This document shows, in pieces, positions 6,949 through 46,265 of a stretch of DNA of 64,000 nt. The stretch spans positions 5,022,001-5,086,000 of the forward strand of contig NW_025767079.1 in assembly GCF_003918875.1 (NCBI RefSeq), given 5' to 3'. Source of the stretch: Haliotis rubra (lineage: Eukaryota). A program made the position numbers and the translations under genes. Each line of letters starts with the position of its first letter. Positions within the stretch are counted from its first letter, which is position 1. The notes under the pieces are model-generated. The model ran no database searches, was not told the DNA's origin, and was given only the letters and a program-made list of their open reading frames with translations.

Positions 6949-6960
6949 CGTGTATTGGAA

Positions 6961-13715: not shown

Positions 13716-13750
13716 TAATAACATGTAGTAGTTACACTATGTAAAAAACA

Positions 13751-15073: not shown

Positions 15074-15489
15074 ATCAACACTATGAGCATCCTTCTACGC
15101 CATTGGTTGTACGATGACACGCGATGGCCAAGTACCTACAGGAATACACATTGGCATTTAGAAATTGGTCAAATCAGGGATACTTTACAACAGCCGGACA
15201 TCTAATACACTCTGGGTCTCAAAGACAATTGGCTTCTTATACACATGACACTATAATGTTACAAGACATCTAATACACTGTGGTTCTTAAAGATACTTGG
15301 CTTCTTATACACATGAGACTATATTGTTTCGCCGTCGACTCACTCACTCTGGCAGTGAGCAAGAAATATATCTGGTCCTCGGCTGACTTATATTTCCGAA
15401 ATGTACAATGTTATATGCCACAGAACAGTATATGTTTTCAACATTCAACAGTTGAATGAACCTACATGTGTTCACGGTATACAATATAG

Positions 15490-18400
15490 TCTAATGTGAA
15501 TAAGAAGCCAAGTGTCTTTAAGACCCAGAGTGTGTTAGATGTCCGGTAACATTATAGTCTCATGTGTATAAGAAGCCAAGTATCTTTAAGACCCACAGTG
15601 TATTAGATGCCCGGTCCCATTATAGTCTCATGTGTATAAGAAGCCAGGTGTCTTTAAGGCCCAGAGTGTATTAGATGTCCGGTAACATTATAGTCTCATG
15701 TGTATAAGAAGCCAAGTGTCTTAAAGGCCCAGAGTGTACTAGATGTCAAGTAACATTATAGTCTCATGTGAATAAGAAGCCAAGCGTCTTTAGAACCCAG
15801 AGTGTATTAGATGTCCGGTAACATTATAGTCTCATGTGTATAAGAAGCCAAGGGTCTTTAAGGCACAGAGTGTATTAGATGTCCGGTAACATTATTGTGT
15901 CATGTGAATAAGAAGCCAAGTGTCTTTAAGACCCACGGTGTATTAGATGTCCGGAAACATTATAGTCTCGTGTGTATAAGAAACCAAGGGTCTTAAAGAA
16001 GCCAAGTGTCTTTAAGTTCCAGAGTGTATAAGAAGTCCGGTAACATTATAGTCTCAGGTGTATAAGAAGTCAAGTATCTTTAAGACCCAGGGTGTATTAA
16101 ATGTCTTGTAACATTATAGTCTCATGTGTAGAAACCAAGAGTCTTTAAGACCCACAGTGTATTAGATGTCCGGCAACATTATAGTCTCATGTGTATAAGA
16201 AGCCAAGTGTGTTTAGGACCACAGTGTATTAGATGTCCGGTAGTCTCTCGTACAGACCCTGAAGCAAATATATCCAAGAAAGCCCACACAAGTCTAGAAA
16301 ATGTGGCAAGTCTAGATTTCCTCAGCGAAGAAGGTCTCAAGGCTCCTTTTCATTATATTTTATATTTTTTTACTATGAACATTTTTCAGTAAAATATGTT
16401 CATTTCAGAGACTAGTTGTTAGTCTAGATGTCCGGTAACATTATAGTCTCATGTGTATAAGAAGCCAAGCGTCTTTAGAACCCAGAGTGTATTAGATGTC
16501 CGGTAACATTATAGTCTCATGTGTATAAGAAGCCAAGCGTCTTTAGAACCCAGAGTGTATTAGATGTCCGATAACATTATAGTCTCATGTGAATAAGAAG
16601 CCAAGTGTCTTTAAGGCCCAGAGTGTATTAGATGTCCGGTAACATTATAGTCTCATGTGAATAAGAAGCCAAGTGTCTTTAAGACCCTGAGTGTATTAGA
16701 TGTCCGGTGACATTATAGTCTCATGTGTATAAGAAGCCAAGTGTCATTAGAACCCAGAGTGTATTAGATGTCTTGTAACATTATAGTCTCATGTGTATAA
16801 GAAGCCAAGCGTCTTTAAGACCCAGAGTGTATTGGATGTCAGGTAACATTATAGTCTCAGGTGTATAAGAAGCCAAGTGTCTTTAGAACCCAGAGTGTAT
16901 TAGATGTCCGGTAACATTATAGTCTCATGTGTATAAGAAGCCAAGAGTCTTTAAGGCCCACAGAGTATTAGATGTCCGGAAACATTATAGTCTCGTGTGT
17001 ATAAGAAGCCAAGGGTCTTTAAGGCCCAGAGTGTATTAGATGTCCGGCAACATTATAGTCTCATGTGTATAAGAAGCCAAGTATCTTTAAGACCCACAGT
17101 GTATTAGATGTCCGGCAACATTATAGTCTCATCTGTATAAGAAGCCAAGTGTCTTTAAGTTCCAGAGTGTATAAGAAGTCCGGTAACATTATAGTCTCAT
17201 GTGTATTAGAAGCCAAGTGTCTTTAAGACCCAGAGTGTGTTAGATGTCCGCTAACATTATAGTCTCATGTGTATGAGAAGCCAAGTGTCTTTAAGACCCA
17301 GAGTGTGTTAGATGTCCGCTTACATTATAGTCTCATGTGTATAAGAAGCCAAGTGTCTTTAAGGCCCAGAGTGTATTAGATGTCCGGAAACATTATAGTC
17401 TCATGTGTATAAGAAACCAAGTGTCTTTAAGGCCCAGAGTGTATTAGATGTCCGGAAACATTATAGTCTCATGTGTATAAGAAACCAAGGGTCTTTAAGA
17501 AGCCAAGTGTCTTTAAGTTCCAGAGTGTATAAGAAGTCCGGTAACATTATAGTCTCAGGTGTATAAGAAGTCCGGTAACATTATAGTCTCATGTGTATGA
17601 GAAGCCAAGTGTCTTTAAGGCCCCGAGTATATTAGATGTCCGGAAACATTATAGTCTCATGTGTATAAGAAGCCAAGTGTCTTTAAGTTCCAGAGTGTAT
17701 TAGATGTCCGGTAACATTATTGTCTCATGTGTATGAGAAGCCACGTGTCTTTAAGACCCAGATAGTACTAGAAGTCCGGCAACATTATAGTCTCAGGTGT
17801 ATAAGAAGTCAAGTATCTTTAAGACCCAGAGTGTATTAGATGTCTTGTAACATTATAGTCTCATGTGTAGAAACCAAGAGTCTTTAAGACCCACAGTGTA
17901 TTAGATGTCCGGCAACATTATAGTCTCATGTGTATAAGAAGCCAAGGGTCTTGAAGACCCACAGTGTATTAGATGCCCGGTCCCATTATAGTCTCATGTG
18001 TATAAGAAGTCAAGTGTCTTTAAGACCCACAGTGTATTAGATGTCCGGTACCATTATAGTCTCATTTGTATAAGAAGCCAAGTGTCTTTAAGACCCACAG
18101 TGTATTAGATGTCCGGAAAGAATATCGTCTCATGTGTATAAGAAGCCAAGTATCTTTAAGAACCACAGTGTATTAGATGTCTTGTAACATTATAGTGTCA
18201 TGTGTATAAGAAGCCAACTGTCTTTAGGACCCAGAGTGTATTAGATGTCCGGCAACATTATAGTCTCATGTGTATAAGAAGCCAAGGGTCTTTAAGACAC
18301 AGAGTGCATTAGATGTCCGGTAACATTATTGCCTCATGGGCATAAGAAGCCAAGTGTCTTTAAGACCTACAGTGTATTAGATGCCCGGTAACATTATAGT

Positions 18401-19085
18401 CTCATGTGTATAAGAAGCCAAGCGTTTTTAAGCCCCAGAGTGTATTAGATGTCCGGTAACATTATAGTCTCGTGTGTATAAGAAGCCAAGCGTCTTTAAG
18501 AGCCAGAGTGTATAAGATGTCCGGTAACATTATAGTCTCATGTGTATAAGAAGCCAAGAGTCTTTAAGGCCCACAGTGTATTAGATGTCCGGTGACATTA
18601 TAGTCTCATGTGTATGAGAAGCCAAGTGTCTTTAGAACCCAGAGTGTATTAGATGTCTTGTAACATTATAGTCTCATGTGTGTAAGAAGCCAAGTGTCAT
18701 TAAGGCCCACAGTGTATTAGATGTCCGGTGACATTATAGTCTCATGTGTATAAGAAGCCAAGTGTCTTTAGAACCCACAGTGTATTAGATGTCTTGTAAC
18801 ATTATAGTCTCATGTGTATCAGAAGCCAAGCGTCTTTAAGACCCAGAGTGTATTGGATGTCAGGTAACATTATAGTCTCATGTGTATAAGAAGCCAAGTG
18901 TCTTTAGAACCCAGAGTGTATTAGATGTCCGGTAACGTTATAGTCTCATGTGTATAAGAAGCCAAGAGTCTTTAAGGCCCAGAGTGTATTAGATGTCCGG
19001 CAACATTATGGTCTAATGTGTATAAGAAGCCAAGTGTCTTTAAGTTCCAGAGTGTATTAGATTTTCCGTTGAACATTATGGTCTA
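15490..19085 (+). repeat. 68-bp satellite array (about 50 units), built from four ~17-bp subunits
   Basis: Consensus GTGTATTAGATGTCCGGTAACATTATAGTCTCATGTGTATAAGAAGCCAAGTGTCTTTAAGACCCAGA; period 68 (e.g. TCCGG at 16431 and 16499). Confidence 0.97.
16241..16426. mobile_element. Short non-autonomous DNA element inserted in the satellite
   Basis: TAGTCTC..GAGACTA inverted motif; GATGTCCGG duplicated on both sides; another copy near 49555-49710. Confidence 0.75.
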
Positions 19086-19285
19086 GTATGCATTAAGAGC
19101 CAAATGCATTTCAGGTCAAGTTTGAAAAAGATACCCGGTGAAGATAATGGTCGAACCTGTATTTAAGGCCCGGTATTTACAAATGTATTGATAGTCCAGT
19201 GTGTATTGAAGGCCTGGTGTGTATTAGAAGCCAAGTGTATATTTAAGGCCCAGTATGTATTAGTAGTCCAGAATGTACTTACCTG

Positions 19286-19402
19286 GGGCCTTATTCTCGA
19301 AACGTTCGTAGCCCTAAGAATTCTTAACTTTGATCGTAGCCAATGTTTTAAGAATGGGCTTAAGAAGTTCGTAGGGCTACGAACGTTTCGAGAATAGCTA
19401 GC
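19286..19402. mobile_element. Harbinger-like MITE (CWG target), left arm only
   Basis: TATTCTCGAAACGTTCGTAGCCCTA / TAGGGCTACGAACGTTTCGAGAATA; flanked by CTG and CAG; empty site near 44652. Confidence 0.8.
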
Positions 19403-20052
19403 CAGGTGTACAATAGTTACGCAGGATGTATTTGTAATCCAGGGTGTACTAGAGGACCAGTATGAAATGGTATTCAAATGTGTATTAGAGACCAAGTGTA
19501 TAGTGGTGAGCCAGTGTGTAGTAATATATGAAAAGGGTCTTTTGGGTTGAATACTTTCTTGCAGAAGTCGGACAGAAATCTATGAAACTAAATACACGAA
19601 TACGATAGATTTATTCCATAACATACTTTAGAGAAACAAACACACCCCTACAAATCCACACTGCAAACACACAGTAAAACAACTGGAGGCAATTCTCAGC
19701 ACTCATAGTGAGTGAGTGAGTTGGGTTTTACGCCGCTTTCAGCAAAGTTCCAGCCATATAACTAATTCAATCATTCCATTTGTTACACCTGTGGCAGTGG
19801 GGTGGGGGATGGGGGTGCCGAAGATCCAGGTTCGATTCCCTACATGGGTACAATGTGTGAAGCCCATTTCTGATGTCCACCGCCGTGATATTGCTGGAAT
19901 ATTGCTGAAAGCAGTGTACATAATCACTCAGTCAGATCAGTCGAACCTGTCTATTTGGGTGTAAAGTTTAGAAACATGACCACCTATTCCAGACCATACC
20001 TGTATTTATCCTGTATTATAAGATTTTGTTCAAATTATCTAAGTCCTGTTTT

Positions 20053-20804
20053 TCACAGTGAACTGTTAATAAGACTTGTAGCGTACAGCTCAAGTACACA
20101 CTGAAAAACGCTTTCCCCATTTTTCAACATGTCCACACATATGGCGCCTGGCTTAGTTTCATGTTCCCAAAAGTCAAGTTCAATGGCATCTCCAAAATTG
20201 CATTCTTTTCTGTACCACATGAAAGCAGATTTAAGTTTTAACGGTTGTAACCCTAAGCCAGACTGGGTTGTCTGCCCTTTGACTAAACCTTCACAGCAAT
20301 ATTTCAAATAATTGGTAAAATGAACATGATGGTTTGCATCTATGTCGCTGTAAGACACTTGCCCTGCAAACACATTGCTTACACGTGATTGGTCAGATGG
20401 CCTCTCAAGAGCACTGAATCTCATTGGCTCGCCTGTGCACAAGTGCCCGTAGGTACTCTTCCATTGCTGGGGAATCTCGACAGGCTTTTTACTGCTTTTG
20501 TCGAGTATTATTGAATTACTTCGATACTTGACCAGTGGAACTGAACCGGATGTCATCACTGTGTCCATGACAATGGTGCTTTTGCCGACGTTGCTGACGG
20601 TGGTGTCTGTACACAGAGGGGCTTTCACAACAGCTTCGTCATGAAGCTGCTCGCTTAAGTCGATTTTTGCAGTCACTACAAACGCATCAGTTTCACCGAA
20701 AAGCTGGTGAAGGCCGAGAAACGACTTCCCGCCGTCTGTTGGATGTATGAGACAAATCTGGGTTGAATCTATGATGTCCATCACGCTCCATGGATGCGGA
20801 GATG
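20053..20804 (-). CDS. Double-HotDog acyl-ACP/acyl-CoA thioesterase-like protein, copy 1, main (last) exon
   Basis: VSYSDIDANHHVHFTNYLKYC resembles the acyl-ACP thioesterase SDxDxNxHVNNxxY motif; TVSNVGKSTI strand motif; YRKECNFGD; acceptor TTCGCAG at 20805. Confidence 0.85.
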
Positions 20805-20974
20805 CTGCGAATATGAAAGGACAATTGACATTACATTCCCTGTATTCTTTGTCTCAGTTAACCACACAAACACACACACACGCACATACACACGCACACA
20901 TATAACCCATGGAAGACATACAGGGTAATACAAACACGTCCGCCAGCGCCTGCGTGTACGAATTCACACATCTC

Positions 20975-21500
20975 ATCTCGTCATCTCACTGGTAACATCT
21001 AGACTCGACTATTGCAGCTCACCCCTAGAGGGCGCCACCAGAGTTCAGCTGTCGAAGTTGCAACGAGTGCAAAATGCAGCTGCTAGAATCGTAACCCGGA
21101 CCAAACCATCTGAACACATCACTCTAGTACTTAAGCAGCTCCACTGGCTACCCATCCAGCACAGAATAATGTTCAAAACTCTCTGCTTTGATTTCAAGGA
21201 TCTAACTGGTCAAGTGCGGCACTACATAACTGAACTGATTCAGCCATACATCCCTGCGAGAATATAACGATCCAAATACAAGTCACTGCTCGTGATCCCT
21301 CCAGTGAGAACGTCCAGCTACGGGAAGAGAACCTTCAAGTATGCTGCCGCAAAGACATGGAACGAACTGCCTGATTGTTTGAAAAACTGTTCAAATCTAC
21401 ATGACTTCAAACGAAGTCTCAAAACTTATCTCTTTAGACTGTCATATCCAGATGACTAGCTTCAGCTCAAGTGACTATGTTTTTAATTCTGTGCGCTTTG
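20975..21500 (+). mobile_element. L2-clade LINE 3' fragment in the thioesterase intron
   Basis: SRLDYC, LQRVQNAAARIVT, LKQLHWLPI, FKRSLKTYLF motifs; mirrored at 42520-43030. Confidence 0.85.
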
Positions 21501-21618
21501 AGAAGTTACTGTGAATGGAAATAGCGCGGTACAAATGGACTATAATAACATGTTCGCAAGCGTATGTACGCTCGCACGCACGCTCGCTCGCACTCAAGTA
21601 CAACGCGGAATCACTCAC

Positions 21619-21716
21619 CGTTTCCATGGAAGTTGGTATACGCGAGTCCAGGAACGATAACTCTACCACAATTAGTCGCCTTTATTATTCTCTCATACCC
21701 AAGCTGCTTAATAATT
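21619..21716 (-). CDS. Thioesterase copy 1, upstream coding exon (IIKQLGYERIIKATNCGRVIVPGLAYTNFHGN)
   Basis: TTTTCAG acceptor, G|GTGAGT donor; splices in frame (phase 1) to give ..FHGNASPHPWSVMDII..; identical in both arms. Confidence 0.75.
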
Positions 21717-22254
21717 CTGAAAATAGAGACAACACTTGAAAATAGAACATGAATTTATTTCGCAGCCTCTAGTGAAACTGGGGCGGTGGGGTGGTCATTT
21801 CTGGTGTCCCCCGCCATGATATTGCTGGAATATTGCTAAAGGCGGCGTAAAACTAAACTCACTCACCCCTGTGAAACTTAATTCAACATAGATCAATGTC
21901 ATTACACTCCAGTGAAATACTGATTTCTAAGTTTCAAAGGTATATATCTTAAAACTAATAAATACATGTTAGGTCACAAACATGATTTCACATTTCCTAA
22001 CAATGATGATAAGAAAAAAACAATACGATGGAAACAGACTGAGCATGTCCAATCAGCAAGAAATTCAAGTTATCTTTGCCACTTAAAAAGGGACGTTTAC
22101 TTCAGTGCGGTGTATTTGTATGTCTCGTGTTCTGCCTGAGTCAACTTCACTGGAATATCTACCTAAATAATCACACGTAAGTAAGTACAAAATAACTTAT
22201 AGCAGCTTGATCTAAGTCGCCAGGCTAGTGATCCAGCGAGATTGAGGTGCCGTT

Positions 22255-22530
22255 GGTATATGACCAGATGGTGGCCACATGAATACGCGCGAACGCCCAG
22301 TTGCGGGTACATCAACGAGCAGTAAACTTGGACTATGTGTCCCAGTCCACCCAGCTGTGAATGGGAACCTTGTAAGGATGGGAAAGCCACACTAACTTGG
22401 TGCGCCTCGTGCCCCAGTGCCGTTGAGATCGATATCCAATGATCGAGGGATCGAGGGAAAACAAAGCGCCTTTGAGCAGCTGAGCTGGATATCGGCGCCT
22501 TACAAATATTAGTATGATGATGATTATACC
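22255..22530 (+). mobile_element. SINE-like family D (CORE-like CCACCCAGCTGTGAATGGG, ATG-repeat tail)
   Basis: Mirrored, longer copy at 41330-41710. Confidence 0.55.
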
Positions 22531-22549
22531 AGCCCCATGAATTAGTGAG

Positions 22550-22947
22550 TGATAAATAGAGAATCTCACCCAAGTGTCTTCTGATATCAATTATATCAAC
22601 ACGAGTTGATAAAGTTACAAATATACGAGGCTTGCCGGGGATATTTTTACTTTTATCAACGAGTGTTGACATATTTTTGATGTCAGAAGACACGAGGGTG
22701 AGATTCTATTTATCATCCAAAATCACTCTTCATTAATTTTCAATGAAAAATGTACATCTCTGAACATGGTACTGCCATTAGACTTGCAGTGCAGCGATGT
22801 CATAGCATTGTGACGTCATCAAGTACATGACGTCATAGCATTGTCAGGGCATTGTACAAAATCTACTGTCAAAACGATATCTCCTAGGAGATATCGTTTG
22901 ATCTCAAACAAGCGATATCTCCTGTGGAACACAGTTTTTGATGATAA
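22550..22947. mobile_element. Long-hairpin non-autonomous element 1 (Crypton-like), left arm only
   Basis: Hairpin 22551-22714; bounded by TGATAA direct repeats; absent at the paralogous site near 41300. Confidence 0.7.
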
Positions 22948-23344
22948 TATACAATTATAGACTCTTGTAGAGGTCGATGTCGGTTTTTATTGACCTGAGA
23001 AAAACAATATCGACCAAGCTTGCGAGGTCGATATTGTTTTTCTCAGGTCAAAAAACCCCCGATATCGACCTCTACTAGAGTCTATAATCGTTTTATTATA
23101 TAATGAAAGAGAAACGGGTTTTAACATAAACTTTTAATGCACACACTGTGCCATCTATCCGAGTGATCTGACTGGCTGAAAAGCGGGGGAAGCCCCTTCG
23201 TACGGGATTCCTTGTCTATTTTTAGTAACCCAAGTCAATATCGTAATTTATCAGAAAACTCAAGTCAATATCGTGTTTTGTAGTCAATCATGTGACGGTA
23301 TTTTGACCAATCGTGGTACAGGAAAAATACTACCTATATAATAA
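22948..23344. mobile_element. Long-hairpin non-autonomous element 2 (Crypton-like), left arm only
   Basis: Hairpin 22954-23088; ends TATATAATAA; absent from the right arm. Confidence 0.7.
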
Positions 23345-23497
23345 TTAGTTTTACGCCACTTTCAGCAGTATTCAAAGAATATCACGGCGGGGTACACCAG
23401 ATATGGGCTTCACACATTGTACCCATGTGGGGAATCGAATCCGGCTTATCAGCGTCACGATCGAACACTTTAACCACTAAGCTACCCGACCGCCCCC
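23341..23497 (-). mobile_element. SINE family B copy
   Basis: Paralogous to 41147-41315; its tail is split by the hairpin elements. Confidence 0.85.
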
Positions 23498-26400
23498 GCC
23501 AGCAGCCTGAGTCATGAGCCGGTCAACAGCCTGGTATTGGTCAACTTGTCTCTGATGCATCATTGCTGATGAGTTGCGGTATACTGCAGTTAAAGTCATA
23601 AAGCTTGGCCATTAACCGGGGCACGACTCTGGTACCGGGTGGTCATGCTGCTTGACCAATTCTCTCAAGCTGCCGCCAAGCCATTGTTGTACGACTACTA
23701 TCATGTAGATGTACTAACATCATTAACAAAAGGTCAAGTGAAATACACAATGCCATTTAGAAAGTGGTCAAATGTAACATATGTTTTATTTGGGATTACA
23801 CTTTCAAAAAGGTCAAGTTGACCCTCGGATGCAGAGGGGCAATGCCCAACCGAAAGCATAGCCTGACATTCTACTAAAGCTAGGGGGTATTCCCGTGAAG
23901 TAGAATTCTGTTAATACATTCTTGATGTTGGTGTTGTTGTTCTAAGGGATTAAGTCACTGGGTGCTGTAAAATTCTGAACTATGTTGTGGAATATGATTT
24001 GAATTTACTGAGTTTGGCTCACTGAAATTATAACGATACTGATTAATGTGTCCACCCATTCAGTGCAATACAGTACGCTTACATGTCCTACATGTTATAT
24101 AAATACCATCAAGTTACAATGACTAGTATCATTTTCATTATGGCTCATGCACGATTCCAAGTTCGATTACAAGTTACATGTACAGAGTAAACAAGAGGAA
24201 AGCAGAGGAATGGATGTTCTGGCGATGCATCTCTAGAAAATTGAAACTGCTACAATGTCAACCATCGATGCTGTTGTATCAAATTACATTAGAAAACACG
24301 TATTCTGTTGTGTAGACGACAATTCACATATCAATTCTGTCATGAAATGAAATACCTAATGATTTCAATTCACTTCAGTTATCTGTCATCAAAAGAAATA
24401 TTTGATTGTTCTATTTTGCTGTTGTTGTCTGTTGTCAAAAGACGTCAAAGAACAAACAATGTCACGACACTATAGTAATATGAAAACAATAGTTCCTTGA
24501 AAAATGTTCATCGCCAGTTTGTGAGTATTATATACATGATACATATAGCTGAAACTACAGAGGCTGAATAAACGCCAACCATCTTCTATTTCTAATGAGG
24601 ACCATCAACTGGCCACTCCACAATATGGCATTCAGCGCGCCTGTTGACGATCTGCACAGTTGCATTCGCCTTTGCTTGGAAAGCCCTTATTATGTACTGA
24701 TAACATTTACATCAACTACGAATTATCTTTGTAACTGTTCCATAATCACCTTGATATTTGGCCCGTAGTCATATTTCAGGAGTGAAACCTTTGATGAAAT
24801 GTAACTTTCCCCCAGCGGTGTCAGTGGTTTGTTTCGAATCGAGCATCCGACTTGCGTTGAATCATTCGTGACCAAATCGTGTTATTCCGGGACAATCCGA
24901 ATACCATTCGTCACCACTCGTCCCGTGCCGTACCGCTATTCAGCTTGTGCCGGAATAACACAAGTTGGTCACAAATGGCCGAATACTCGCCTCTTATCTA
25001 CCTGCCGGAATGACACGAGTAGTTACGAATAGGCCGTATAACGAGGTCACTGAAACGGGTTATTTGGGACGAATGGCGCTCAACAAGCCTCCGGGAACCC
25101 ATGGGCAAGCGACAGCCTCCGACTGTTTCCGAATGAACGAAGTTGCACCTGTGTAAAGGCGATACTTTTTCGACACAGAATGAAGAGGAGTTCTATCCTG
25201 AATACCATATCAACATTCTCTAACACAACACAAACACATCTCTCACCACATCTATAGTTCTTGTCTAATGCTTAGTCTCTGAATATGTATAATTTTGATA
25301 GTAACAAACAAGACCATTTAAATTGAAAAGGAGCCCCAGGGAGACCAGAGATCCTGAAGCTGAAGAAATCTAGACTTGCTTTATTTAGGGCTTTAGCACT
25401 GCTGAGAGGGCTTGGCAGTAGGGAAAATCATGCGGTTCATGGACTGTGAGACAGGCTAGTATAGTTCCTACCTTTGTTTTGTTTTTTGTTTGTTGTGCAA
25501 CACATAAAGTCTGTACTAACATGCTGTTGTGTCAGAAAGACGTCAAGAATAATTGGCTAAATTCAAAAGACAATTTACCATATGAAATCATTTTTGATGT
25601 TTGATGTGACGGAGATTTGTCTGAATTTAAACAGCAAATAATATCGCTGGTTTCCCTCGGTCATTTAGCTGCGTCGTGAAAAGTCAGTCATCCGTGTGAC
25701 CTTCTCTGGCCGTCAAGCTTGGTTGCCCAAGCGAGATGTACGTTATTTTGAATGGTACCTTTTGAATGACCACTTGTCTACTTGATTCTACTATTTGACT
25801 GATCCATTATAAGAAATACTAGTAGGTATCAGCTTGAGGATTAGTTGTACACTGAACCAGAAATGGTGTTGTTTTAGGCTGTCTAAGATATGGCGGTCTA
25901 AGTTTTGGGAGGTTACCATCAGGGAATATCATGCGAGCACACAGCAAAGCTGTCTAGAAACTCAGACAAAAGCGTGCTAGACAAGCTCCAAACCCGACCA
26001 GTAGGTCTTTACGGAGAGTTGATCATGACTGTGTTTTGTTGTTGTTGAGTGTAAAGGTGTACGTAGGAGAAAGGGTTGTGTAGAGTGAGGCAGCGTAGAG
26101 TAGAGTCATATAAGGTAGTGTAAGTATGACAGACACAGTGTATTCTGTAAGTGTCGATGTTACGAGCGTTAATGAGTGTTGGCAGAGACCATATAATTAT
26201 ATGGTCTCTGGTATGGGATGTACATTTATTACCCACGTGGTCAACGTATGGCATACTAATCTCGTACGTCACACGAGTGTCGTATCGCGTTGACCTGTGT
26301 CGTAACGACTTGACCTGAAATACTAACGATTTGATTGGATAACCGATGACCTCTCAATTAGGTCACATTCTGACGTAACTATTTTTTTCATTCTTAACAA

Positions 26401-36210: not shown

Positions 36211-39200
36211 TTGTTATCGTGTTATTACACCACGGCTCTCAATTTACCTGGTGGTCTATATTTAGACCGTCACCGATAGCGGAAGAAACCGAGTTGAGCC
36301 GAGAGATTGCACCACCATCGTGAAAGTCATTCGTCACCACACGCCCCTTTCCGTAACCTCCAAGAAGATTCGTCTTGTCCCGGAATAACACGAGTTGGTC
36401 GCAAATGCGTGGAAATGTGTATTCTGCGCATGCGTACCGGTTTCAGAAAGGGGTTGTTTCAAAACGTTTTACAACAATATTTCCAAGTTGGTGGTCACGA
36501 TCAACTCGCGTACTGTAGCATTGAAGGCAGTTTGCTGCGCGGTGGTCGGGGTGTTGTTATGCCCCAAGTCACCCATATCCTGGTAAAGATACCCGCAAGA
36601 GCATAATTCGTCGCAGTCCTGTCCAAACCTCGTATCTGACTTTTATAATGTTTTGAGATAATCGGAAAAAATGTTTCATTTGTTTATGTGCAAACTTAAC
36701 ACAATGAGTTTTCAATCATAACTTTGCATCAATATTTGCAGTGAAACCAAACATGTTTGGCATCTCAATTCCCAAGCGTTAGGTCTGGATGAAAAATACG
36801 AGGTTTTGCATCAAGTCTATTATGAAATAGTATGTTTTGAAAAACAGGTAATTTCACTTAAGGTCACATGCAACCAAAAAATCAAACACAATTAAAACAC
36901 AATTATCACTTCTTCATGACATATAATATGCATTGCTGATTATGAAAAAACAAATAAACAAAATTATAAGCGTATAAACGCAAATCAAAAGTGCAATATT
37001 TTGTACTTGGGTTTACCTCCCAAGGAACGAAGCAGCCGGGATACCGACCCCAGTCAGAGCGGGTGGGTGTGCACTCAAGTGTAGCGGTTGGTTCATTTGC
37101 AGATGCCGCCCCCGCGGCTCATTGTGTGTGTATATATAGAGATGTTTGGTTTTGTAAATACATGCTCATTTTTTGTGTATAACATTTTGCAATCAACAGA
37201 CGTCATAACTTGTCATGTGTTCAAGTATCACACCTGCCTGTCTGTGTAATTACATAATGTGACAGAGACCGAACTCGGGCCATAAATCAATGCATTTTGT
37301 TTATGGTGTATAGCCTGATTGGTGTTACGTTCAAATTGCATGTGGTCAGTGATAGCAGCTGTGTATTGAATATTGTCATTAGAAGACAGGCAGGCAGACA
37401 CACAGGTGTCAATAAAACAAGACATTGAGTTTTGTCTGTGACAACGACATATCTATATCACAGTTAGAAATTGTGTCAACGCTAAATAATGACATTGCTT
37501 TTAGGTATCGAACTGAGAAAGTGACTCGGTAAGAAGAACGTGTGGTGAAATAGACAAATGAAATAATATAAACAGTTTATTTACTGTCATAACATATAAA
37601 AAGCTCGCACCTGTGAGCTATAAACAAAACATTATGAAAATAGCTCACACCAAAGCCTTCACCGAGTATTCACCAGACAGCCCGCTTCCAAGTTGCGCGA
37701 ACCTATTTCACTGAGCGCAGCCCAGCTGTTGAAACCCGTTTTCCGGCGAAATTTTCGACACTTTCATGTACCGCTGTACAGAAATATACGGCGCATCTGA
37801 CGTGAAAAAACATACAAACATATAGGGAGGGGGATAAAAAGGCAGTTGTATATTTCTATCTGCTTTAAGTTTACTTTGAAACTTGTTTTATAACGTGTAT
37901 TTTTAGTAATTCCTCTACTAATGTATCGACCATCTCTTATGCCTCTAAGTTAACACATCTATTGTTAGTTTTTCCCAACGAATGTTGTACATCCCACACT
38001 CATTAACGCTCGTAACATCACGTGACACTTACAGAATACACTTTCTGTCATACTTACACTACCTTATATGACTGATACTCTACGCTGCCTTATAACTCAC
38101 TCTACATAACCCTCTCTCCTACATAACACCATTACACTCAATAACAACAAAACAGAGTCATGATCAACATTGGGACAAGCTGCACTGGCAGGCGAACGTA
38201 GATGATCTCCGTAAAGACCTACTGGCCGGGTATGTATGGAGCATATCTAGCACGCTTTTGTCTGAGTTTGTTGACAGCTTTGTTGTGTGCTCGCATGATA
38301 TTCCCTGATGGTAACCTCCCAAAACTTAGACCGCCATATCTTAGACATCCTAAAACAACACAATTTCTGGTTGAGTGCACAGCTAATCCTCAAGCTGATA
38401 CCTATTTCTAATAATGGATCAGTTCGGTAGAATTCTGCACGTCAGCCCGTCGAGCTAGTCAGACAGTAACGTCTCGGCGTGGTAATTCAAAAGGTACCAT
38501 TCAAAATAACGTACATCTCGCTTGGGTAACCAAGCTTGACGGCCAGAGGTCACACGGATGACTGACTTTTCACGACGCAGAGTAAATGACCCGAGGGAAA
38601 CCAGCGATATTATTTGCTGTATAAATTTAGACAAATCTCCGTCACATCAAACATCATAAATGCTTTCATATGGTAAGTTTTGTTTTGAGTTTAGCCACAT
38701 TATTATTGACGTCTTTCTGACACAACAGCATGTTAGTACAGACTCCATGTGTTGCACAACAAACAAAAACAAAACAAAGATAGGAACTATAGTAGCCTGT
38801 CTCACAGTCCATGAACCGCATTATTTTCCCTACTGCCAAGACCTTTCTGCACTGCTTAAGCCCTAAATAAAGCAAGTCTCGATTTCCTCAGGTTCAGGAT
38901 CTCTGGTCTCCCTGGGGCTCCTTTTCAATTTAAATGGGGTTGTTTGTTACTATCAAAATTATACATATTCAGAGACTAAGCATTAGACAAGAACTATAGA
39001 TGTGGTGAGAGATGTGTTTGTGTTGTGTTAGAGAATGTTGATATGGTATTCAGGATAGAACTCATCTTCATTCTGTGTCGAAAAAGTATCGCCTTTACAC
39101 AGGTGCAACTTCGTTCATTCGGAAACAGTCGGAGGCTGTCGCTTGCCCATGGGTTCCCGGAGGCTTGTTGAGCGCCATTCGTCCCAAATAGCCCGTTTCA

Positions 39201-39896
39201 GTGACCTCGTTATACGGCCTATTCGTAACTACTCGTGTCATTCCGGCAGGTAGATAAGAGGCGAGTAGTTACAAATGTATTCGGCCATTTGTGACCAACT
39301 CGTGTTATTCCGGCACAAGCTAAATAGCGGTACGGCTACGGGACGAGTGGTGACGAATGGTATTCGGCTTGTCCCGGCATAACACCATTGGGTCACGAAT
39401 GATCCAACGCAAGTCGGAAGCTCGATTCAAACAAACCATTGACACAGCTGGGGGAAAGTTACATTTCATCAAAAGGTTTCACTCCTGAAAGATGACTACG
39501 GGCCAAATGTCAAGGTGATTATGGAACAGTAACAAAAATAATTCGTAGTTGATGTAAATGTTATCAGTACATAATACGGGCTTCCCAAGCAAAGGCGAAT
39601 GCAACTGTGTAGATCGTCAACAGGCGCGCTGAATGCCATATTGTGGAGTGTCCGGTTGATGGTCCTCATTAGAAATAGAAGATGGTTGGCGTTTATTCAG
39701 CCTCTGTAATTTCAGCTATATGTATCATGTATATAATACTCAAAAACTGGCGATGAACATTTTGCAATGAACTATTGTTTTCATATTACTATAGTGTCGT
39801 GACATTGTTTGTTCTTTGACGTCTTTTGACAACAGACAACAACAGCAAAATGGAACAGTCAAATATTTCTTTTGATGACAGATAATTACAGTAAAA

Positions 39897-40055
39897 CGAG
39901 TGAGTGTGGTTTTACGCCGCTTTTAGCAATATTCCAGCAATATCACGGCAGGTGACACCATAAATGGGCTCCACACATTGTGCCCATGTGGGGAATCGAA
40001 CCCGGGTCTTCAGCGTGACGAGCGAACGCTTTAACCACTAGGCTACCCCATCTCC
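39897..40055 (-). mobile_element. SINE family B, right arm only
   Basis: Empty site near 24375 in the left arm. Confidence 0.85.
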
Positions 40056-40682
40056 CGGAAGTAAAATGAAATCACCATGCTTCTTTTGATGACATAACTG
40101 AAATGAAATAAAAACATCACGGTTTTTATCTTCTTTTGCGTAGCATTGATCTGTGAATTGCCGTCTACACAACAGAATACGTGTTTGCTAGGGTAATTTG
40201 ATACAACAGCATTGATGGTTGACATTGTAGCAGTTTCAATTTTCTAGAGATGCATCGCCAGAACATCCATCCCTCTGCTTTCCTCTTGTTTACTCTATAC
40301 ATGTAACTTGTAATCGAACTCTCTTAACTGTGCATGAGACATTATGAAAATGATACTAGCCATTGTAACTTGATTGTACTTATACAATATGTAGGAAATG
40401 TAAGCGTACTGTATTACACTGAATGAGTGAACACATTAATCAGTATCATTATAATTTCAGTGAGCTAAACTCAGTAAATTCAAATCATATTCCACAACAT
40501 AGTTCAGAATTTTACAGCACCCAGTGACTTAATCCCTTAAAACAACACCGGCACAACATCAAGGATGTATTAACAGAATTCTACTTCACGGGAATACCCC
40601 CTAGCTTTAGTAGAATGTCAGGCTATGCTTTCGGTTGGGGATTGCCCTTCTGCATCTGAGAGTCCACTTGACCTTTTATAAC

Positions 40683-40851
40683 ATGTTATATTTGGGACTA
40701 CACTTTATTTGTAAAGTACAGATTCTAGTACTTTTGTTGGATTGAGTCCCATCCGGGATTCGAACCCACACCGAATCCCGGATGGGACTCAATCCAACAA
40801 AAGTACAAGAATCTGTACTTTACAAAGAAAGTGTAATCCCAAATAAAACAT
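40683..40851. repeat. ~80-bp-arm fold-back of a family E SINE
   Basis: TACTTTTGTTGGATTGAGTCCCATCCGGGATTCG, loop AACCCACAC, CGAATCCCGGATGGGACTCAATCCAACAAAAGTA. Confidence 0.9.
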
Positions 40852-42094
40852 ATGTTACATTTGACCACTTTCTAAATGGCATTGTGTATTTCACTTGACC
40901 TTTTGTTAAGGATGTTAGTACATCTACATGATAGTAGTCGAACAACAATGGCTTGGCGGCAGCTTGAGAGAATTGGTCAAGCAGCATGACCACCCGGTAC
41001 CAGAGTCGTGCCCCGGTTAATGGCCAAGCTTTATGACTTTAACTGCAGCATACCGCAACTCATCACCAATGATGCATCAGAGACAAGTTGACCATTAGCT
41101 ACCTTTAATACCAGGCTGTTGACTGGCTCATGACTCATGCTGCTGGCGGGTGCGGTCGGGTAGCTTAGTGGTTAAAGTGTTCGCTCGTGACGCCGATAAG
41201 CCGGGTTCGATTGCCCACATGGGTATTATATGTGAAGCCCATATCTGGTGTACCCCGCCGTGATATTCTTGGAATACTGCTAAAAGTGGCGTAAAACTAA
41301 TTATCACTCACTAACTCATGGGTCTGGTATAATCATCATCATACTAATATTTGTATAGCGCCCATATCCAGCTCAGCTGCTCAAAGGCGCTTTGTTTTCC
41401 CTCGATCATTGGATATCAATCTCAACGGCACTGGGGCACGAGGCGCACCAAGTTCGTGTGGCTTTCCCATCCTTACGAGGTACCCATTCACAGCTGGGTG
41501 GACTGGGACACATAGTCCAAGTTTACTGGGACACATAGTCCAACTTCTTTGCACGTTGCTGTACCCGCAACTGGGCGTTCGCGCGTATTCATGTGGCCAC
41601 CATTTGGTCATTTACCAACGGATTCGTGGGTTCTTTTAAGTGCGCAGGGCTTTGTACTGTACACTAGGGGTTGTGACAACACTGAAAGTGTCTGCACACA
41701 AGCTTGTCCCGGCACCTCAAGCTCGCTGGATCACTAGCCTGGCGACTTAGATCAAGCTTCTATAAGTTATTTTGTACTTATACTTACGTGTGATTATTTA
41801 TGTAGATATTCAAGTGAAGTTGACTCAGGCAGAACACGAGACATACAAAAACACCGCACTGAAGTAAACGTCCCTAAAGTGGCAAAGATAACTTGAATTT
41901 CTTGCTGATTGGACATGCTCAGTCTGTTTCCAACGAATTGGGTTTTTTCTTATCATCATTGTAAGGAAATGTGAAATCATGTTTGTGGCCTAACATATAT
42001 TTATTGGTTTTAAGATGTATACCTTTGAAACTTAGAAATCAGTATTTCACTGGAGTGTAATGGCATTTATCTATGTTGAATTAAGTTTCACTGG

Positions 42095-42240
42095 GGTGAG
42101 TGAGTTTAGTTTTACGCCGCATTTAGCAATATTCCAACAATATCACGGCGGGGGACACCAGAAATGGACTTTTCACATTGTACCCATGTGGGGAATCGAA
42201 CCCGGGTCTTAGGCGTGACTAGTGACTACCCCACCGCCCC
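42095..42240 (-). mobile_element. SINE family B copy
   Basis: Paralogous, internally deleted copy at 21780-21868. Confidence 0.85.
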
Positions 42241-42303
42241 AGTTTCACTAGAGGCTACGAAATAAATTCATGTTCTATTTTCAAGTATTGTCTCTATTTT
42301 CAG

Positions 42304-42401
42304 AATTATTAAGCAGCTTGGGTATGAGAGAATAATAAAGGCGACTAATTGTGGTAGAGTTATCGTTCCTGGACTCGCGTATACCAACTTCCATGGAAAC
42401 G
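42304..42401 (+). CDS. Thioesterase copy 2, upstream coding exon
   Basis: TTTTCAG|A..AACG|GTGAGT; in frame with the exon starting at 43192. Confidence 0.75.
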
Positions 42402-43191
42402 GTGAGTGATTCTGCGTTGTACTTGGGTGCGAGCGAGCGTGCGTGCGTACATACGCTTGCGAACATGTTATTATAGTCCATTTGTAAAGCGCTATTTCCA
42501 TTCACAGTAAATTCTCAAAGCGCACAGAATTAAAAACATAGTCACTTGAGCTGAAACTAGTCATCTGGATATGACAGTCTAAAGAGATAAGTTTTGAGAC
42601 TTCGTTTGAAGTCATGTAGATTTAAAAAGTTTTTCAAACATTCAGACAGTTCGTTCCATGTCTTTGCGGCAGCATACTTGAAGGTTTCTCACTGGAGGGA
42701 TCACAAGCAGTGACTTGGATTTGGATCGTAATGTTCTCACGAGATGTAGGGCTGAATCAGTTCAGTAATGTAGTGCGGCACTTGGCCAGTTAGACCCTTG
42801 AAAACAAAGCAGACGAGTTTTGAACATTATTCTGTGCTGGATGGGTAGCCAGTGGAGCTGCTTAAGTATTTGAGTGATATGTTCAAATGGTTTGATCCGG
42901 GTTACGATTCTGGCAGCTGCATTTTGCACTCGTTGCAACTTCGATAGCTGAACACTGGTGGCGCCCTCTAGGAGTGAGTTGCAATAGTCGAGTCCAGATG
43001 TTACCAGTGAGATGACGAGATGCGATGTGTGAATTCGTACACGCAGGCGCTGGCGGCCGTGTTTGTTTTACCCTGTATGTCTTCCATGGGTTATATGTGT
43101 GCGTGTGTACGTGCGTGTGTGTGTGTTTGTGTGGTTAATTGAGACAAAGAATACAGGGAAAGTAATGTCAATTGTCCTTTCATATTCGCAG

Positions 43192-43944
43192 CATCTCCGC
43201 ATCCATGGAGCGTGATGGACATCATAGATTCAACCCAGATTTGTCTCATACATCCAACAGACGGCGGGGAGTCGTTTCTCGGCCTTCACCAGCTCTTCGG
43301 TGAAACTGATGCGTTTGCAGTGACCGCAAAAATCGACTTAAGCGAGCAGCTTCATGACGAAGCTGTTGTGAAAGCCCCTCTGTGTACAGACACCACCGTC
43401 AGCAACGTCGGCAAAAGCACCATCGTCATGGACACAGTGATGAAATCCGGTTCAGTTCCACTGGTCAAGTATCGATGTAATTCAATAATACTCGACAGAA
43501 CCAGTAAAAAGCCTGTCGAGATTCCCCAGCAATGGAAGAGTACATACGGGCACTTCTGCACAGGCGAGCCATTGAGATTCAGTGCTCTTGAGAGGCCATC
43601 TGACCAATCACGTGTAAGCAATGTGTTTGCAGGGCAAGTGTCTTACAGCGACATAGATGCAAACCGTCATGTTCATTTTACCAATTATTTGAAATATTGC
43701 TGTGAAGGTTTAGTTAAAGTGCAGACAACCCAGTCTGGCTTAGGGTTGCAACCGTTAAAACTAAAATCTGCTTTCATGTGGTACAGAAAAGAATGCAATT
43801 TTGGAGATGCCATTGAACTTGACTTTTGGGAACATGAAACTAAGCCAGGCGCCATATGTGTGGACATGTTGAAAAATGGGGGAAAGCGTTTTTCAGTGTG
43901 TACTTGAGCTGTACGCTACAAGTCGTATTAACAGTTCACCGTGA
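43192..43944 (+). CDS. Double-HotDog thioesterase-like protein, copy 2, main exon; +1 frameshift near the C-terminus (ORF stops at 43907)
   Basis: 10 amino-acid differences from copy 1 over the first ~223 residues; G5 run at 43878-43882 versus G4 in copy 1. Confidence 0.8.
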
Positions 43945-44059
43945 AAAACAGGACTTAGATAATTTGAACAAAATGTTATTGCGAGGATAAATACAGGTAT
44001 GGTCTGGAATAGGCGTTCATGTTTCAAAACGTTACACCCAAGTAGGCAGCTTCGACCTG

Positions 44060-44225
44060 AGTGAGTGAGTATTTACACTGCTTTCAGGAATATTCCAGCA
44101 ATATCACGGCGGTGGACATCAGAAATGGGTTTCACACTTTGTACCCATGTAGGGAATCGAACCTGGATCTTCGGCGTGACGAGCGAACGCTTTGACCACA
44201 AGGTTACACCACCCCACCCCACCCA
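44060..44225 (-). mobile_element. SINE family B copy
   Basis: Paralogous, internally deleted copy at 19797-19935. Confidence 0.8.
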
Positions 44226-44849
44226 CTCACTGCCACAGGTGTAACAAATGGAATGATTGAATTAGTTATATTGCTGGAATTTTGCTGAAAGCGGCGTAAA
44301 ACCCAACTCACTCACTCACTATAAGTGCTGAGAATTGCCTCCAGTTGTTTTACTGTGTATTTGCAGTGTGGATTTGTAGGGGTGTGTTTGTTTCTCTAAA
44401 GTATGTTATGGAATAAATCTATCGTATTCGTGTATTTAGTTTGCATGGTTTTTTTTACAAATCTATGCGTTTCAGAGATTTCTGTCCGACTTCTGCAAGA
44501 AAGTATTCAGCCCAAAAGACCCTTTTCATATAATACTACACACTGGCTCACTACTGTACACTGGGTCTCTAATACACGTTTGAATACCATTTCATATTGG
44601 TCCTCTAGTACACCCTGGATTACAAATACATCCTGGGCAACTATTGTAAACCAGGTCTATAGTACGTTCTGGACTACTAATACATACTGGGCCTTAAATA
44701 TACACTTGGCTTCTAATACACACCAGGTCTTCAATACACACTGGACTATTAATACATTTGTAAATACCGGGCCTTCAATACAGGTTCGACCATTATCTTC
44801 ACCAGGTATCTTTTTCAAACTTGACCTGAAATGCATTTGGCTTTTAATG

Positions 44850-45965
44850 CATACTAGACCATAATGTTCACCGGAAAATCTAATACACTCTGTGCCTTAA
44901 GACACTTAGTAGTCCAGAAAGACCGCCTCCGTGTGGTAGTGGATAGAGCGTCTGCCCGGAGAGCGTCATACCAAAAGACGTTAAAATACCTGGTACTTGT
45001 TGGTCCCTGCCTGGCGCTCGGCATTAATGGGTACAACAAGGACTGGTCAGCTCGGAGTCAGTATAATGTGTCTGAGTGGGGTATTCAAGCTTCACTGCGG
45101 CATGGTATCTCAGTGGGCTAGCACTATAAAACCAGCTTCAGTCTGGACTAGTACAAGCAGCCGCACATACACATACGCACGCATGCACGTCGTCATATGA
45201 GCGAAATATTCTCAAGTACGACGTTAAACCCAATTTCACCTCACCTCACCTCACCTCAAAGACACTTGGCTTCTTATACACATTATACCATAATGTTGCC
45301 GGACATCTAATACACTCTTGGTCTTAAAGACATTTGGCTTCTTATACACATGAGACTATAATGTTGCCGGACATCTAATACACTCTTGGTCTTAAAGACA
45401 TTTGGCTTCTTATACACATCAGACCATAATGTTACCGGACATCTAATACACTCTCGGTCTTAAAGACATTTGGCTTCTTATACACATTATACCATAATGT
45501 TACGGATATCTTATACACTCTGGTCTTAAAGACACTTGGCTTCTTATACACATGAGACTATAATGTTGCCGGACATCTTATACTCTCTCGGTGTTAAAGA
45601 CACTTGGCTTCTTATACACATCAGACCATAATGTTACCGGATATCTAATACACTCTGGGCCTTAAAGACACTTGGCTTCTTATACACATGAGGCTATAAT
45701 GTTACCGGACATCTAATACACTCTGGGTCCTAAAGACAATTGGCTTCTTATACACATGAGACTATAATGTTACCGGACATCTAATACACTCTGGGCCTTA
45801 AAGACAATTGGCTTCTTATACCCATGAGATCATAATGTTACCGGACATCTAATACACTCTGGGCCTTAAAGACACTTGGCTTCTTATACACATGAGGCTA
45901 TAATGTCACCGTACATCTAATACACTCTGGGTCCTAAAGACGCTTGGCTTCTTATTCACATTACA
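44850..45965 (-). repeat. 68-bp satellite array (about 11 units), inverted relative to the left array, split by a SINE
   Basis: Reverse complement of the left consensus. Confidence 0.95.
44920..45258 (+). mobile_element. SINE family C, right arm only
   Basis: Matches 13043-13389; B-box region deleted; AAGACACTT duplicated around the insertion. Confidence 0.85.
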
Positions 45966-46100
45966 TTATATTGTATACCGGGAACACATGTAGGTTCATT
46001 CAACTGTTAAATGTTGAAAACATAATAACTGTTCTGTGGCACATAACATTTCGGAAATATAAGTCAGCCGAGGACCAGATATTTTTCCTGCTCACTGCCA

Positions 46101-46265
46101 GAGTGAGTGAGTATGGTTTAAAGCCGCTTTTAACAATATTCCAGCAATATCACGGCGGGGAACACCAGAAATGGGCTTCACACATTGTACCACATGTGGG
46201 GAATCGAACCTGGGTGTTCGCCGTGACGAGCCAACGTTTTAACCACTAGGTTACCCCACCGCCCC
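46101..46265 (-). mobile_element. SINE family B spanning the outer duplication breakpoint
   Basis: Complete here; only the ACTCACTCACT tail is present at 15338. Confidence 0.85.

What the first reader, a model, noticed from the sequence alone, without database searches (positions are those of the whole stretch)
44476..45965. Satellite apparently born from a dead zinc-finger exon
Seen: after a TTTCAG acceptor, 44476-44547 reads RFLSDFCKKVFSPKDPFHIILHTG. This is a C2H2 finger with the first Cys replaced by Ser (TCC versus TGC) and two residues short. It is followed directly by degenerate 18-bp repeats of the same codons (LLYTGS, LIHTGP, SIHTGL; to about 44790) and then by the 68-bp satellite of four related ~17-bp subunits (CTAATACACTCTGGGTC-like). 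The mirror gradient is at 19581 down to 15490. Inference: the H-T-G linker codons seeded an 18-mer minisatellite that became a 68-bp higher-order unit.
Basis: partly seen in the sequence, partly recalled or inferred. Interest (0 to 1): 0.72.

Follow-up and report, generated by a model that had tools for sequence, protein, structure and literature searches.

The report
Local abalone tandem repeat, finger by chance
A small abalone tandem repeat that grew from an 18-letter unit into a 68-letter unit sits downstream of an ordinary gene and is present twice because the whole block was duplicated in reverse; its resemblance to a dead zinc-finger exon is about what chance gives.

Summary
The letters are as described. 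44476-44547 reads RFLSDFCKKVFSPKDPFHIILHTG. Twelve 18-bp units follow in exact register from 44533, then a 68-bp array at 45258-45961.

The 68-mer is a tetramer of the 18-mer (18+16+18+16). The 18-mer consensus matches its subunits at p 2e-4 to 0.05, so the 18-to-68 step holds.

The "mirror gradient" is not independent. The window (Haliotis rubra) holds an inverted segmental duplication, 15338-26182 against 46112-37993, about 94-96% identical. Each arm carries a thioesterase-like gene and, about 570 bp past its stop, the same array.

Contig depth suggests 5-9 kb of this repeat in the source-like species, and almost none in two relatives. It looks low-copy, young and local, not transposon-borne.

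The zinc-finger origin is not supported:
- Pfam finds nothing.
- In 1.84 billion proteins, no single-repeat match exceeds 10.4 bits, and a non-finger repeat protein scores 10.1.
- A profile built from 56 real fingers gives 9.4 and 11.6 bits, reached by chance 1.3-5.7 times per Mb.
- There are no neighbouring fingers, no parent gene, and no finger at the H. cracherodii locus.

I put finger origin at about 6%. This is an ordinary feature with a neat array-edge gradient.

The parts
37993..46112 (+). Right arm of the inverted segmental duplication
   Evidence: Collinear inverted BLASTN matches to 15338-26182, mostly 94-96% identical outside the arrays
15338..26182 (-). Left arm of the inverted segmental duplication
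43191..43907 (+). Last coding exon of the thioesterase-like gene (H. rubra LOC124287171). Exon 1 is at about 42302-42406. The left paralog is at 20805-20053 and 21718-21614 on the minus strand.
   Evidence: tblastn 100% identity; protein search; Pfam Acyl-ACP_TE_C/4HBT_2
44057..44320 (.). SINE copies between the gene and the array
   Evidence: Many dispersed matches in the window; contig depth about 1e6-1e7 in four species
44443..44475 (+). The 30 bp are deleted and the AG reads AT in the left arm.
   Evidence: Alignment A1. Organism C keeps the segment and the G at 44475.
44476..44547 (+). Finger-like reading RFLSDFCKKVFSPKDPFHIILHTG. Only 44476-44532 is non-repeat sequence.
   Evidence: scored
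19510..19581 (-). Paralogous copy of the finger-like reading (RFLSDFCKKVFNPKDPFHILLHTG)
44533..44809 (+). Degenerate 18-bp minisatellite head. Twelve units lie in exact register at 44533-44748 with mean pairwise identity 57%, followed by units with indels.
   Evidence: TRF periods 18 and 36 at 44669-44756
44810..44909 (+). Transitional, diverged 68-type units in which the 16-bp B subunits first appear
   Evidence: Wrap-around alignment and direct reading
44910..45257 (+). SINE inserted into a 68-mer of the right array only, flanked by an AAGACACTT(A/G)G target duplication
   Evidence: Direct reading; 93.6% identity to 13038-13330; depth about 1e7
45258..45961 (+). 68-bp array, 10.4 units, 91% matches
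45962..46112 (+). Unique distal flank shared with the left arm (15475-15338), ending in (GAGT)3
15475..19110 (-). 68-bp array of the left arm, about 51-53 units, same consensus as the right array except one base. It is interrupted at 16243-16426 by a 184-bp insert.
19120..19508 (-). 18-bp head of the left arm, 93-96% identical to the right head, with a MITE-like insert at about 19286-19402
15193..15330 (+). Two 68-bp units in the opposite orientation just outside the left arm, 96% identical to 18116-18253

Best explanation
This is a non-coding, locus-bound tandem repeat in the 3' flank of a thioesterase-like gene of Haliotis rubra.

Shown:
- A degenerate 18-bp minisatellite (44533-44809) grades into a 68-bp unit that is a tetramer of the same 18-mer. 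Two of its subunits are shortened to 16 bp.
- The homogeneous 68-mers lie away from the array edge. The old 18-mers survive at the edge.
- The gene plus array is present twice, in the arms of an inverted segmental duplication. This explains the mirror image.
- After the duplication the arrays changed independently: about 53 units against 10, a SINE insertion on the right, and a MITE-like and a 184-bp insertion on the left.

Inferred:
- Slippage or unequal exchange amplified a local 18-bp stretch.
- Later a four-unit block with two 2-bp deletions became the unit of amplification.
- Homogenisation was weak at the edge.
- The repeat has no function of its own.
- The zinc-finger look of the 19 codons in front of the array, together with unit 1 of the array, is a chance resemblance.
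For: Repeat anatomy.

Inverted duplication: one search gives the arms, and one search gives 96.3% identity over 1691 aligned bases. Heads are 93-96% identical between arms, while the 18-mers are only 57% alike among themselves. The head therefore long predates the duplication. The two arrays share one consensus; mean unit identity is 0.89 within the right array, 0.87 within the left and 0.87 between them.

Low copy and lineage restriction: summed contig depth over 45294-45977 averages about 1870 in run X1, against 120-245 for single-copy contigs. That is about 5-9 kb-equivalents; the window itself holds 4.45 kb. The figure is about 13 kb in organism B and under 0.3 kb in organisms C and D. SINE bins reach 1e6-1e7. 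The head and flanks sit at 1-2 times single-copy depth.

No transposon hallmarks: the flanks share no direct or inverted repeat. The 18-mer motif occurs only inside the arrays, 47 matches against 0.07 expected.

Finger by chance:
- Pfam finds nothing.
- The exhaustive search of 1.84 billion proteins returns 8 hits at E<=1e-3. All of them arise by summing 3-11 repeats, and the best single repeat scores 10.4 bits (i-Evalue about 9e4).
- Hit number 2 is a non-finger translated tandem repeat scoring 10.1 bits per unit.
- The profile of 56 real fingers gives 9.4 and 11.6 bits. In 9 Mb of Markov DNA, 51 domains reach 9.4 bits and 10 reach 12 bits. Real non-coding DNA here reaches 8.8 bits.
- My heuristic finger score of 17 is reached at 1.4e-6 per six-frame codon, which is 0.18 per 64 kb.

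General background: short repeats giving longer units, and poorly homogenised array ends, are reviewed in PMC5615363.
Against: With the first array unit (IILHTG) held fixed, a random upstream context reaches my heuristic finger score only 1.2e-3 of the time. The juxtaposition is therefore not trivial for a single array.

The top hits of two unbiased searches are mostly C2H2 proteins.

The depth figures come from contigs, and the tool warns they are not copy numbers.

No genome-wide map of the 68-mer in the assembly itself could be made.
Confidence: 0.8

Rival explanations
1. One reading: a pseudogenised single C2H2 finger exon stood here. The codons of its last His-Thr-Gly were the piece that slippage amplified into the 18-mer, so the repeat is a satellite born from coding sequence.
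For: The pattern F-x-S-x2-C-x3-F-x5-F-H-x3-H-T-G holds in both arms. The best hits in the PDB and in 1.84 billion proteins are mainly C2H2 proteins. The conditional chance of the upstream context is 1.2e-3. The T-rich tract and AG in front are ancestral, being present in organism C.
Against: There is no Pfam hit. Single-repeat scores are 10.4 bits or less, equalled by a non-finger repeat protein and nearly equalled by the PvuII restriction enzyme. The upstream part alone and a head peptide alone find nothing.

The profile score is reached 1.3-5.7 times per Mb by chance. That is thousands per genome and of order 0.3-3 at array edges across the roughly 800 windows scanned in this genome.

No second finger is seen in the 156 bp upstream or in the distal flank. 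There is no protein or nucleotide similarity to the real finger gene at 6955-8661. The site lies 569 bp behind the stop of an unrelated gene on the same strand. The H. cracherodii locus has no finger. Organism C has no indel in 44452-44534, so it shares the short spacer.
Confidence: 0.06
2. The two 'arms' are not two loci. They are two diverged haplotypes of one locus that the assembler laid down twice, so the 53-unit and 10-unit arrays would be alleles.
For: In run X1, left-type and right-type contigs sum to 268-327 wherever both are seen. Segments where only one type is seen have 185-245. Organisms B, C and D show one type per site.
Against: The sequences outside both ends of the arms are unrelated to each other. 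An 11.8-kb unique spacer lies between the arms, and there are no Ns in the window. The same depths also fit two loci at 120-165 each, with some converted stretches. The arms differ by three transposon insertions and a 30-bp indel.
Confidence: 0.15
3. The array is the internal tandem repeat of a transposon, as with the Helitron- or MITE-associated satellites of molluscs, and it arrived here by insertion.
For: Many mollusc tandem repeats are transposon-borne (general knowledge; PMC10048060 and PMC5874043 are listed but were not read in detail). SINEs flank the block.
Against: Head, flanks and array sit at 1-14 times single-copy depth, against 1e6-1e7 for the SINEs. The flanks share no terminal repeats. 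The motif is absent from the rest of the window and from the H. cracherodii locus. Nothing was found in the metagenome scan.
Confidence: 0.04

Closest known systems
Satellites whose monomer is built from diverged short subrepeats, or higher-order repeats (for example mouse major satellite from a 9-bp unit; reviewed in PMC5615363)
   Same: A longer unit (68 bp) is made of four diverged copies of a short unit (18 bp). It is amplified as a block, and poorly homogenised older units sit at the array end.
   Different: This one is low-copy (a few kb), euchromatic, next to a gene, and restricted to one locus and to two closely related species. It is not a chromosomal satellite block.
Low-copy euchromatic satellite-like tandem repeats (for example Tribolium, PMC4675708 and PMC10218199; listed but not read in detail)
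   Same: Short arrays lie in gene-rich sequence and vary in length between copies.
   Different: Those families are dispersed at many sites. This one appears confined to one duplicated block.
Coding minisatellites of C2H2 finger arrays (84-bp finger repeats, for example PRDM9; general knowledge)
   Same: The period is a multiple of three, and the repeat reads His-Thr-Gly in one frame.
   Different: The period is 18 bp, not 84. There are no Cys pairs in the units, stops occur in that frame, there is no finger gene at the site, and profile scores are at chance level.
Inverted segmental duplications (palindromic low-copy repeats)
   Same: Two arms of 8-11 kb at about 94-96% identity lie in inverted orientation around an 11.8-kb spacer. 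Each arm carries a gene copy.
   Different: Whether both arms exist in every individual, or in related species, is unresolved. Relatives show one sequence type per site.

Membership tests
C2H2 zinc finger (Pfam PF00096 and relatives) | Four zinc ligands, C-x2-4-C ... H-x3-5-H | tested here: not met
   The first Cys position is Ser (TCC) in both copies. Three of the four ligands are present.
C2H2 zinc finger (Pfam PF00096 and relatives) | 12 residues between the second Cys and the first His | tested here: not met
   There are 10 residues in both arms. There is no indel in organism C over 44452-44534.
C2H2 zinc finger (Pfam PF00096 and relatives) | Profile score above the curated cut-off, or at least above chance | tested here: not met
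   No Pfam family at E<=10. My own 56-finger profile gives 9.4 and 11.6 bits, reached 5.7 and about 1.3 times per Mb in random DNA.
C2H2 zinc finger (Pfam PF00096 and relatives) | Hydrophobic core positions and the H-T-G-E-K-P linker | tested here: inconclusive
   Phe is present at C+4 and C+10, and HTG is present. E-K-P is absent, and the HTG belongs to repeat unit 1.
C2H2 zinc finger (Pfam PF00096 and relatives) | Neighbouring fingers, or a finger gene at the site or at the orthologous site | tested here: not met
   None in the flanks. None in the 23.7-kb H. cracherodii locus. The real finger ORF at 6955-8661 lies outside the duplication and is unrelated.
Satellite DNA with higher-order or subrepeat structure | Head-to-tail array of a unit made of diverged shorter units | tested here: met
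Satellite DNA with higher-order or subrepeat structure | High copy number or long blocks | tested here: not met
   About 5-9 kb-equivalents by contig depth, a rough measure
Inverted segmental duplication | Two arms over 1 kb and over 90% identical in inverted orientation | tested here: met
Inverted segmental duplication | Both copies present as separate loci in one individual | tested here: inconclusive
   Both types are seen in run X1 at several sites, but their summed depth is ambiguous.
Transposon-borne tandem repeat | Terminal repeats or target duplication, and dispersed copies | tested here: not met

The most novel reading that the evidence does not exclude
The 18-bp minisatellite, and through it the 68-bp repeat, was seeded by the His-Thr-Gly end of a pseudogenised single C2H2 finger exon. 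This would be a documented case of a tandem repeat born from coding sequence, with the founder still attached at the array edge.
Probability: 0.06. Interest if true: 0.55.

Novelty: new member of a known kind. Interest (0 to 1): 0.22.

Why it matters
As it stands, this is a clean small example of three known things. A short repeat becomes a longer compound unit. Array edges keep the older units. A segmental duplication carries an array, which then changes length independently in each copy (53 units against 10).

It may serve as a teaching case, or as a length-variable marker in blacklip abalone. It does not open a new question.

It also gives a calibration for this scan. Finger-like peptides of this quality occur by chance about once per 0.2-0.8 Mb of abalone DNA. 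In addition, whole-protein E-values against repeat proteins overstate similarity for short queries.

Tried and rejected
- The metagenome scan for a 25-nt core of the 68-mer found nothing.
- The word-based protein search with the open 62-codon reading of 44403-44588, meant to reach orthologous contigs of other abalones, found nothing.
- The word-based search for relatives of the neighbouring finger gene gave only 2 proteins, too few for a profile. I built the profile later from the hits. Seven of the nine source proteins had been picked by similarity to the relic, so that profile leans in the relic's favour.
- Rfam at E<=1 over 43900-46400 found nothing.
- The literature search found no described abalone satellite of this kind.
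- Coordinate slip: for the left copy, (second protein) and one search used 19488-19580, which is one base out of frame. Those two results are void. replace them, using 19489-19581.
- The 153-codon open frame across the head (44403-44864) was considered as a gene and rejected. It is the stop-free phase of a periodic sequence, it is broken in the left arm, and it has no relatives.
- A foldback-element reading was considered and rejected. The short units lie on the inner side, the arms include a whole gene, and depth is single-locus.
- The organisms of the sequencing runs are coded, so the comparator species cannot be named.

Full report
**What is there**

The window has no Ns. It comes from the blacklip abalone, Haliotis rubra. 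The ORF at 43212-43907 is 100% identical to H. rubra LOC124287171, and an earlier follow-up on another piece of this genome names the same species.

TTTCAG ends at 44475, and 44476-44547 translates to RFLSDFCKKVFSPKDPFHIILHTG with Ser = TCC.

Behind it lies a true 18-bp periodicity. Autocorrelation is 0.42-0.46 at lags 18, 36, 54 and 72. A position weight matrix finds twelve units in exact 18-nt register from 44533 to 44748. No unit lies upstream of 44533, where the background maximum is 12.7 bits.

The first unit, ATACTACACACTGGCTCA, was not used to train the matrix and scores 14.7 bits. It supplies the codons L-H-T-G-S. The C-terminal His-Thr-Gly of the 'finger' is therefore repeat unit 1. 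Only RFLSDFCKKVFSPKDPFHI is non-repeat sequence.

**The step from 18 to 68**

The 68-bp unit (45258-45961, 10.4 copies, 91% matches) has an internal 34-bp period. Identity at lag 34 is 56%, which no shuffle out of 2000 reached. The unit divides into A(18) B(16) A'(18) B'(16).

The head consensus CTAATACACACTGGGCCT matches A at 16/18 (p 2e-4), B (p 2e-4), A' (p 4e-4) and B' (p 0.046). The 68-mer aligns to head positions 44670-44722, including the 2-bp deletion of subunit B. The score is 58, against 16 +/- 2.5 for shuffles.

Between 44810 and 44909 lie diverged 68-type units.

It matches what is known of satellite evolution: short units give longer ones, and array ends are poorly homogenised (PMC5615363).

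**The mirror image**

The copy at 19581 down to 15475 is not a second event. The window holds an inverted segmental duplication, 15338-26182 against 46112-37993. Identity is 96.3% over 1691 aligned bases next to the array.

Each arm carries a two-exon thioesterase-like gene. The array starts about 570-630 bp behind the gene's stop, after a SINE.

The heads are 93-96% identical between the arms, while the 18-mers are only 57% alike among themselves. The head is therefore much older than the duplication.

The two 68-mer arrays share a consensus that differs at one base, and they are not reciprocally distinct. Since the duplication they have diverged in length, about 53 units against 10, and by insertions:
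- a SINE with an 11-bp target duplication at 44910-45257;
- a MITE-like element with perfect 25-bp inverted ends at about 19286-19402;
- a 184-bp insert with an 8-bp target duplication at 16243-16426.

The 30-bp T-rich tract in front of the 'acceptor' is deleted in the left arm, and the AG there reads AT.

**How widespread is the repeat**

I laid Logan contigs of four runs, from four coded organisms, on 42900-46300. SINE bins have summed depth of 1e6-1e7.

- The 68-mer bins average about 1870 in X1, where single-copy contigs have 120-245. That is about 5-9 kb-equivalents. The window alone holds 4.45 kb.
- Organism B has about 13 kb-equivalents.
- Organisms C and D have under 0.3 kb.
- The head and unique flanks sit at 1-2 times single-copy depth.

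These are contig depths and therefore rough. They still exclude an abundant, dispersed satellite, and they point to a young expansion in two closely related species.

The flanks share no terminal repeats. The motif is absent outside the arrays. The H. cracherodii locus, which has three tandem copies of the gene, has no such repeat and no alignable relic. A metagenome scan was empty.

**Is it a dead zinc finger**

Standard searches:
- Pfam gives nothing at E<=10 for either copy or for a longer 47-residue piece.
- A PDB sequence search with the right copy finds only ZBTB20. The whole-chain E-value is 3e-4, but each finger scores 4-7 bits.
- The left copy finds ZBTB38 at E 0.54, and the PvuII restriction enzyme at E 1.1.
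- The upstream part alone and a head peptide alone find nothing.
- The exhaustive search of 1.84 billion proteins returns 8 hits at E<=1e-3, and 7 of them are multi-finger proteins.

Re-running the alignments shows that every one of those scores is a sum over 4-11 repeats. The best single repeat scores 10.4 bits, with an i-Evalue of about 9e4. The second-best hit is not a finger protein at all. It is a translated tandem repeat that scores 10.1 bits per unit. The whole-protein E-values therefore reflect repetition in the targets, not homology.

Chance rates:
- A profile built from 56 real fingers scores the two copies 9.4 and 11.6 bits. The sources were the hits above plus the neighbouring gene, so the profile is slightly biased towards the relic.
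- In 9 Mb of third-order Markov DNA trained on this locus, 51 domains reach 9.4 bits and 10 reach 12 bits.
- Real non-coding DNA of the window plus the H. cracherodii locus reaches 8.8 bits.
- A separate heuristic score gives 1.4e-6 per six-frame codon, which is 0.18 per 64-kb window.

Thousands of equally finger-like peptides are thus expected in a genome I take to be about 1.4 Gb (my assumption, not a tool result).

What remains is the position. With unit 1 held fixed, a random upstream context scores as well 1.2e-3 of the time. Put another way, such a peptide ends inside the first unit of a given array edge with a probability of about 2e-5 to 1e-4. With about 20 arrays per window and roughly 800 windows read in this genome, the expected number of such coincidences is of order 0.3-3. 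Chance is therefore a sufficient explanation.

Against descent:
- There are no other finger remnants in the 156 bp upstream or in the distal flank.
- There is no similarity to the real finger gene at 6955-8661, which lies outside the duplication.
- The site is in the 3' flank of an unrelated gene on the same strand.
- There is no finger at the H. cracherodii locus.
- Organism C has the same short spacer. All its indels lie upstream of 44452.

I put finger origin at about 6%.

**An open point**

In run X1, left-type and right-type contigs both occur at 44578, 44666 and 46025-46045. Some segments show only one type, and the summed depth of the two types (268-327) is close to that of one-type segments (185-245). 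Organisms B, C and D show one type per site, and these are mosaics of left and right states.

This fits two loci with some gene conversion. It also fits, less well, two haplotypes assembled twice. The unrelated sequence beyond both arm ends and the 11.8-kb spacer argue for a real duplication. I could not settle it.

**Verdict**

The mirror is a duplication. The 18-to-68 evolution and the local origin are supported. The coding-exon origin is not.

This is an ordinary, undescribed, locus-specific tandem repeat.

Noticed in passing
window 6955-8661 (+): A real C2H2 finger ORF of 568 codons carries an in-frame 609-bp tandem duplication (6979-7590 and 7588-8199, 98.4% identical) that repeats two fingers. 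The H. asinina relative (P0009, 362 aa) lacks it. This is either a recent internal duplication or an assembly artefact.
   Followed up: partly
window 19286-19402: A MITE-like insert with perfect 25-bp inverted ends (19292-19316 and 19372-19396) lies in the left 18-mer head. It is absent from the right arm.
   Followed up: partly
window 16243-16426: A 184-bp non-satellite insert inside the left 68-mer array is flanked by an 8-bp duplication, CCGGACAT. It is probably a small non-autonomous DNA transposon.
   Followed up: no
window 44910-45257 and 13038-13330: A very abundant SINE with a (CACCT)n tail is inserted into a 68-mer of the right array, with an 11-bp target duplication. A second copy lies at 13038-13330 in reverse orientation. 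No Rfam match was found.
   Followed up: partly
window 15193-15330: Two 68-bp units in inverted orientation lie 8 bp beyond the end of the left arm. They are 96% identical to 18116-18253 inside the array, which suggests a small template-switch copy.
   Followed up: partly
window 44403-44864 (+): A 153-codon ATG-initiated open frame runs through the 18-mers (NTxxWx repeats). It is broken in the left arm and has no relatives in the word search, so it is the stop-free phase of a periodic sequence.
   Followed up: yes
window 31832-32440 vs 51270-52743; ORFs 33856-34860 (-) and 49924-50982 (+): A second set of inverted matches has a different axis from the main duplication. Two PhyH-like dioxygenase ORFs lie in opposite orientation. 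The region has been rearranged more than once.
   Followed up: no
L001 (H. cracherodii) 4713-5499, 12952-13741, 18487-19050; 9306-9694: The related locus holds three direct tandem copies of the last exon of the thioesterase-like gene, and an unrelated 33-bp tandem repeat (11.8 copies, 93% matches).
   Followed up: no
window 44475, 44578, 44666 in runs X1 and X3: Organism B shows only the left-arm states, including the 30-bp deletion. Organism A shows both states at two of the three sites. Copy number of the block may differ between species or individuals.
   Followed up: partly
P0011 (library protein, 163 aa): A translated tandem repeat (22-residue unit, four copies) with no finger domain matches the 31-residue query as well as real fingers do. 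It is a useful warning about whole-protein E-values for short queries against repeat proteins.
   Followed up: yes
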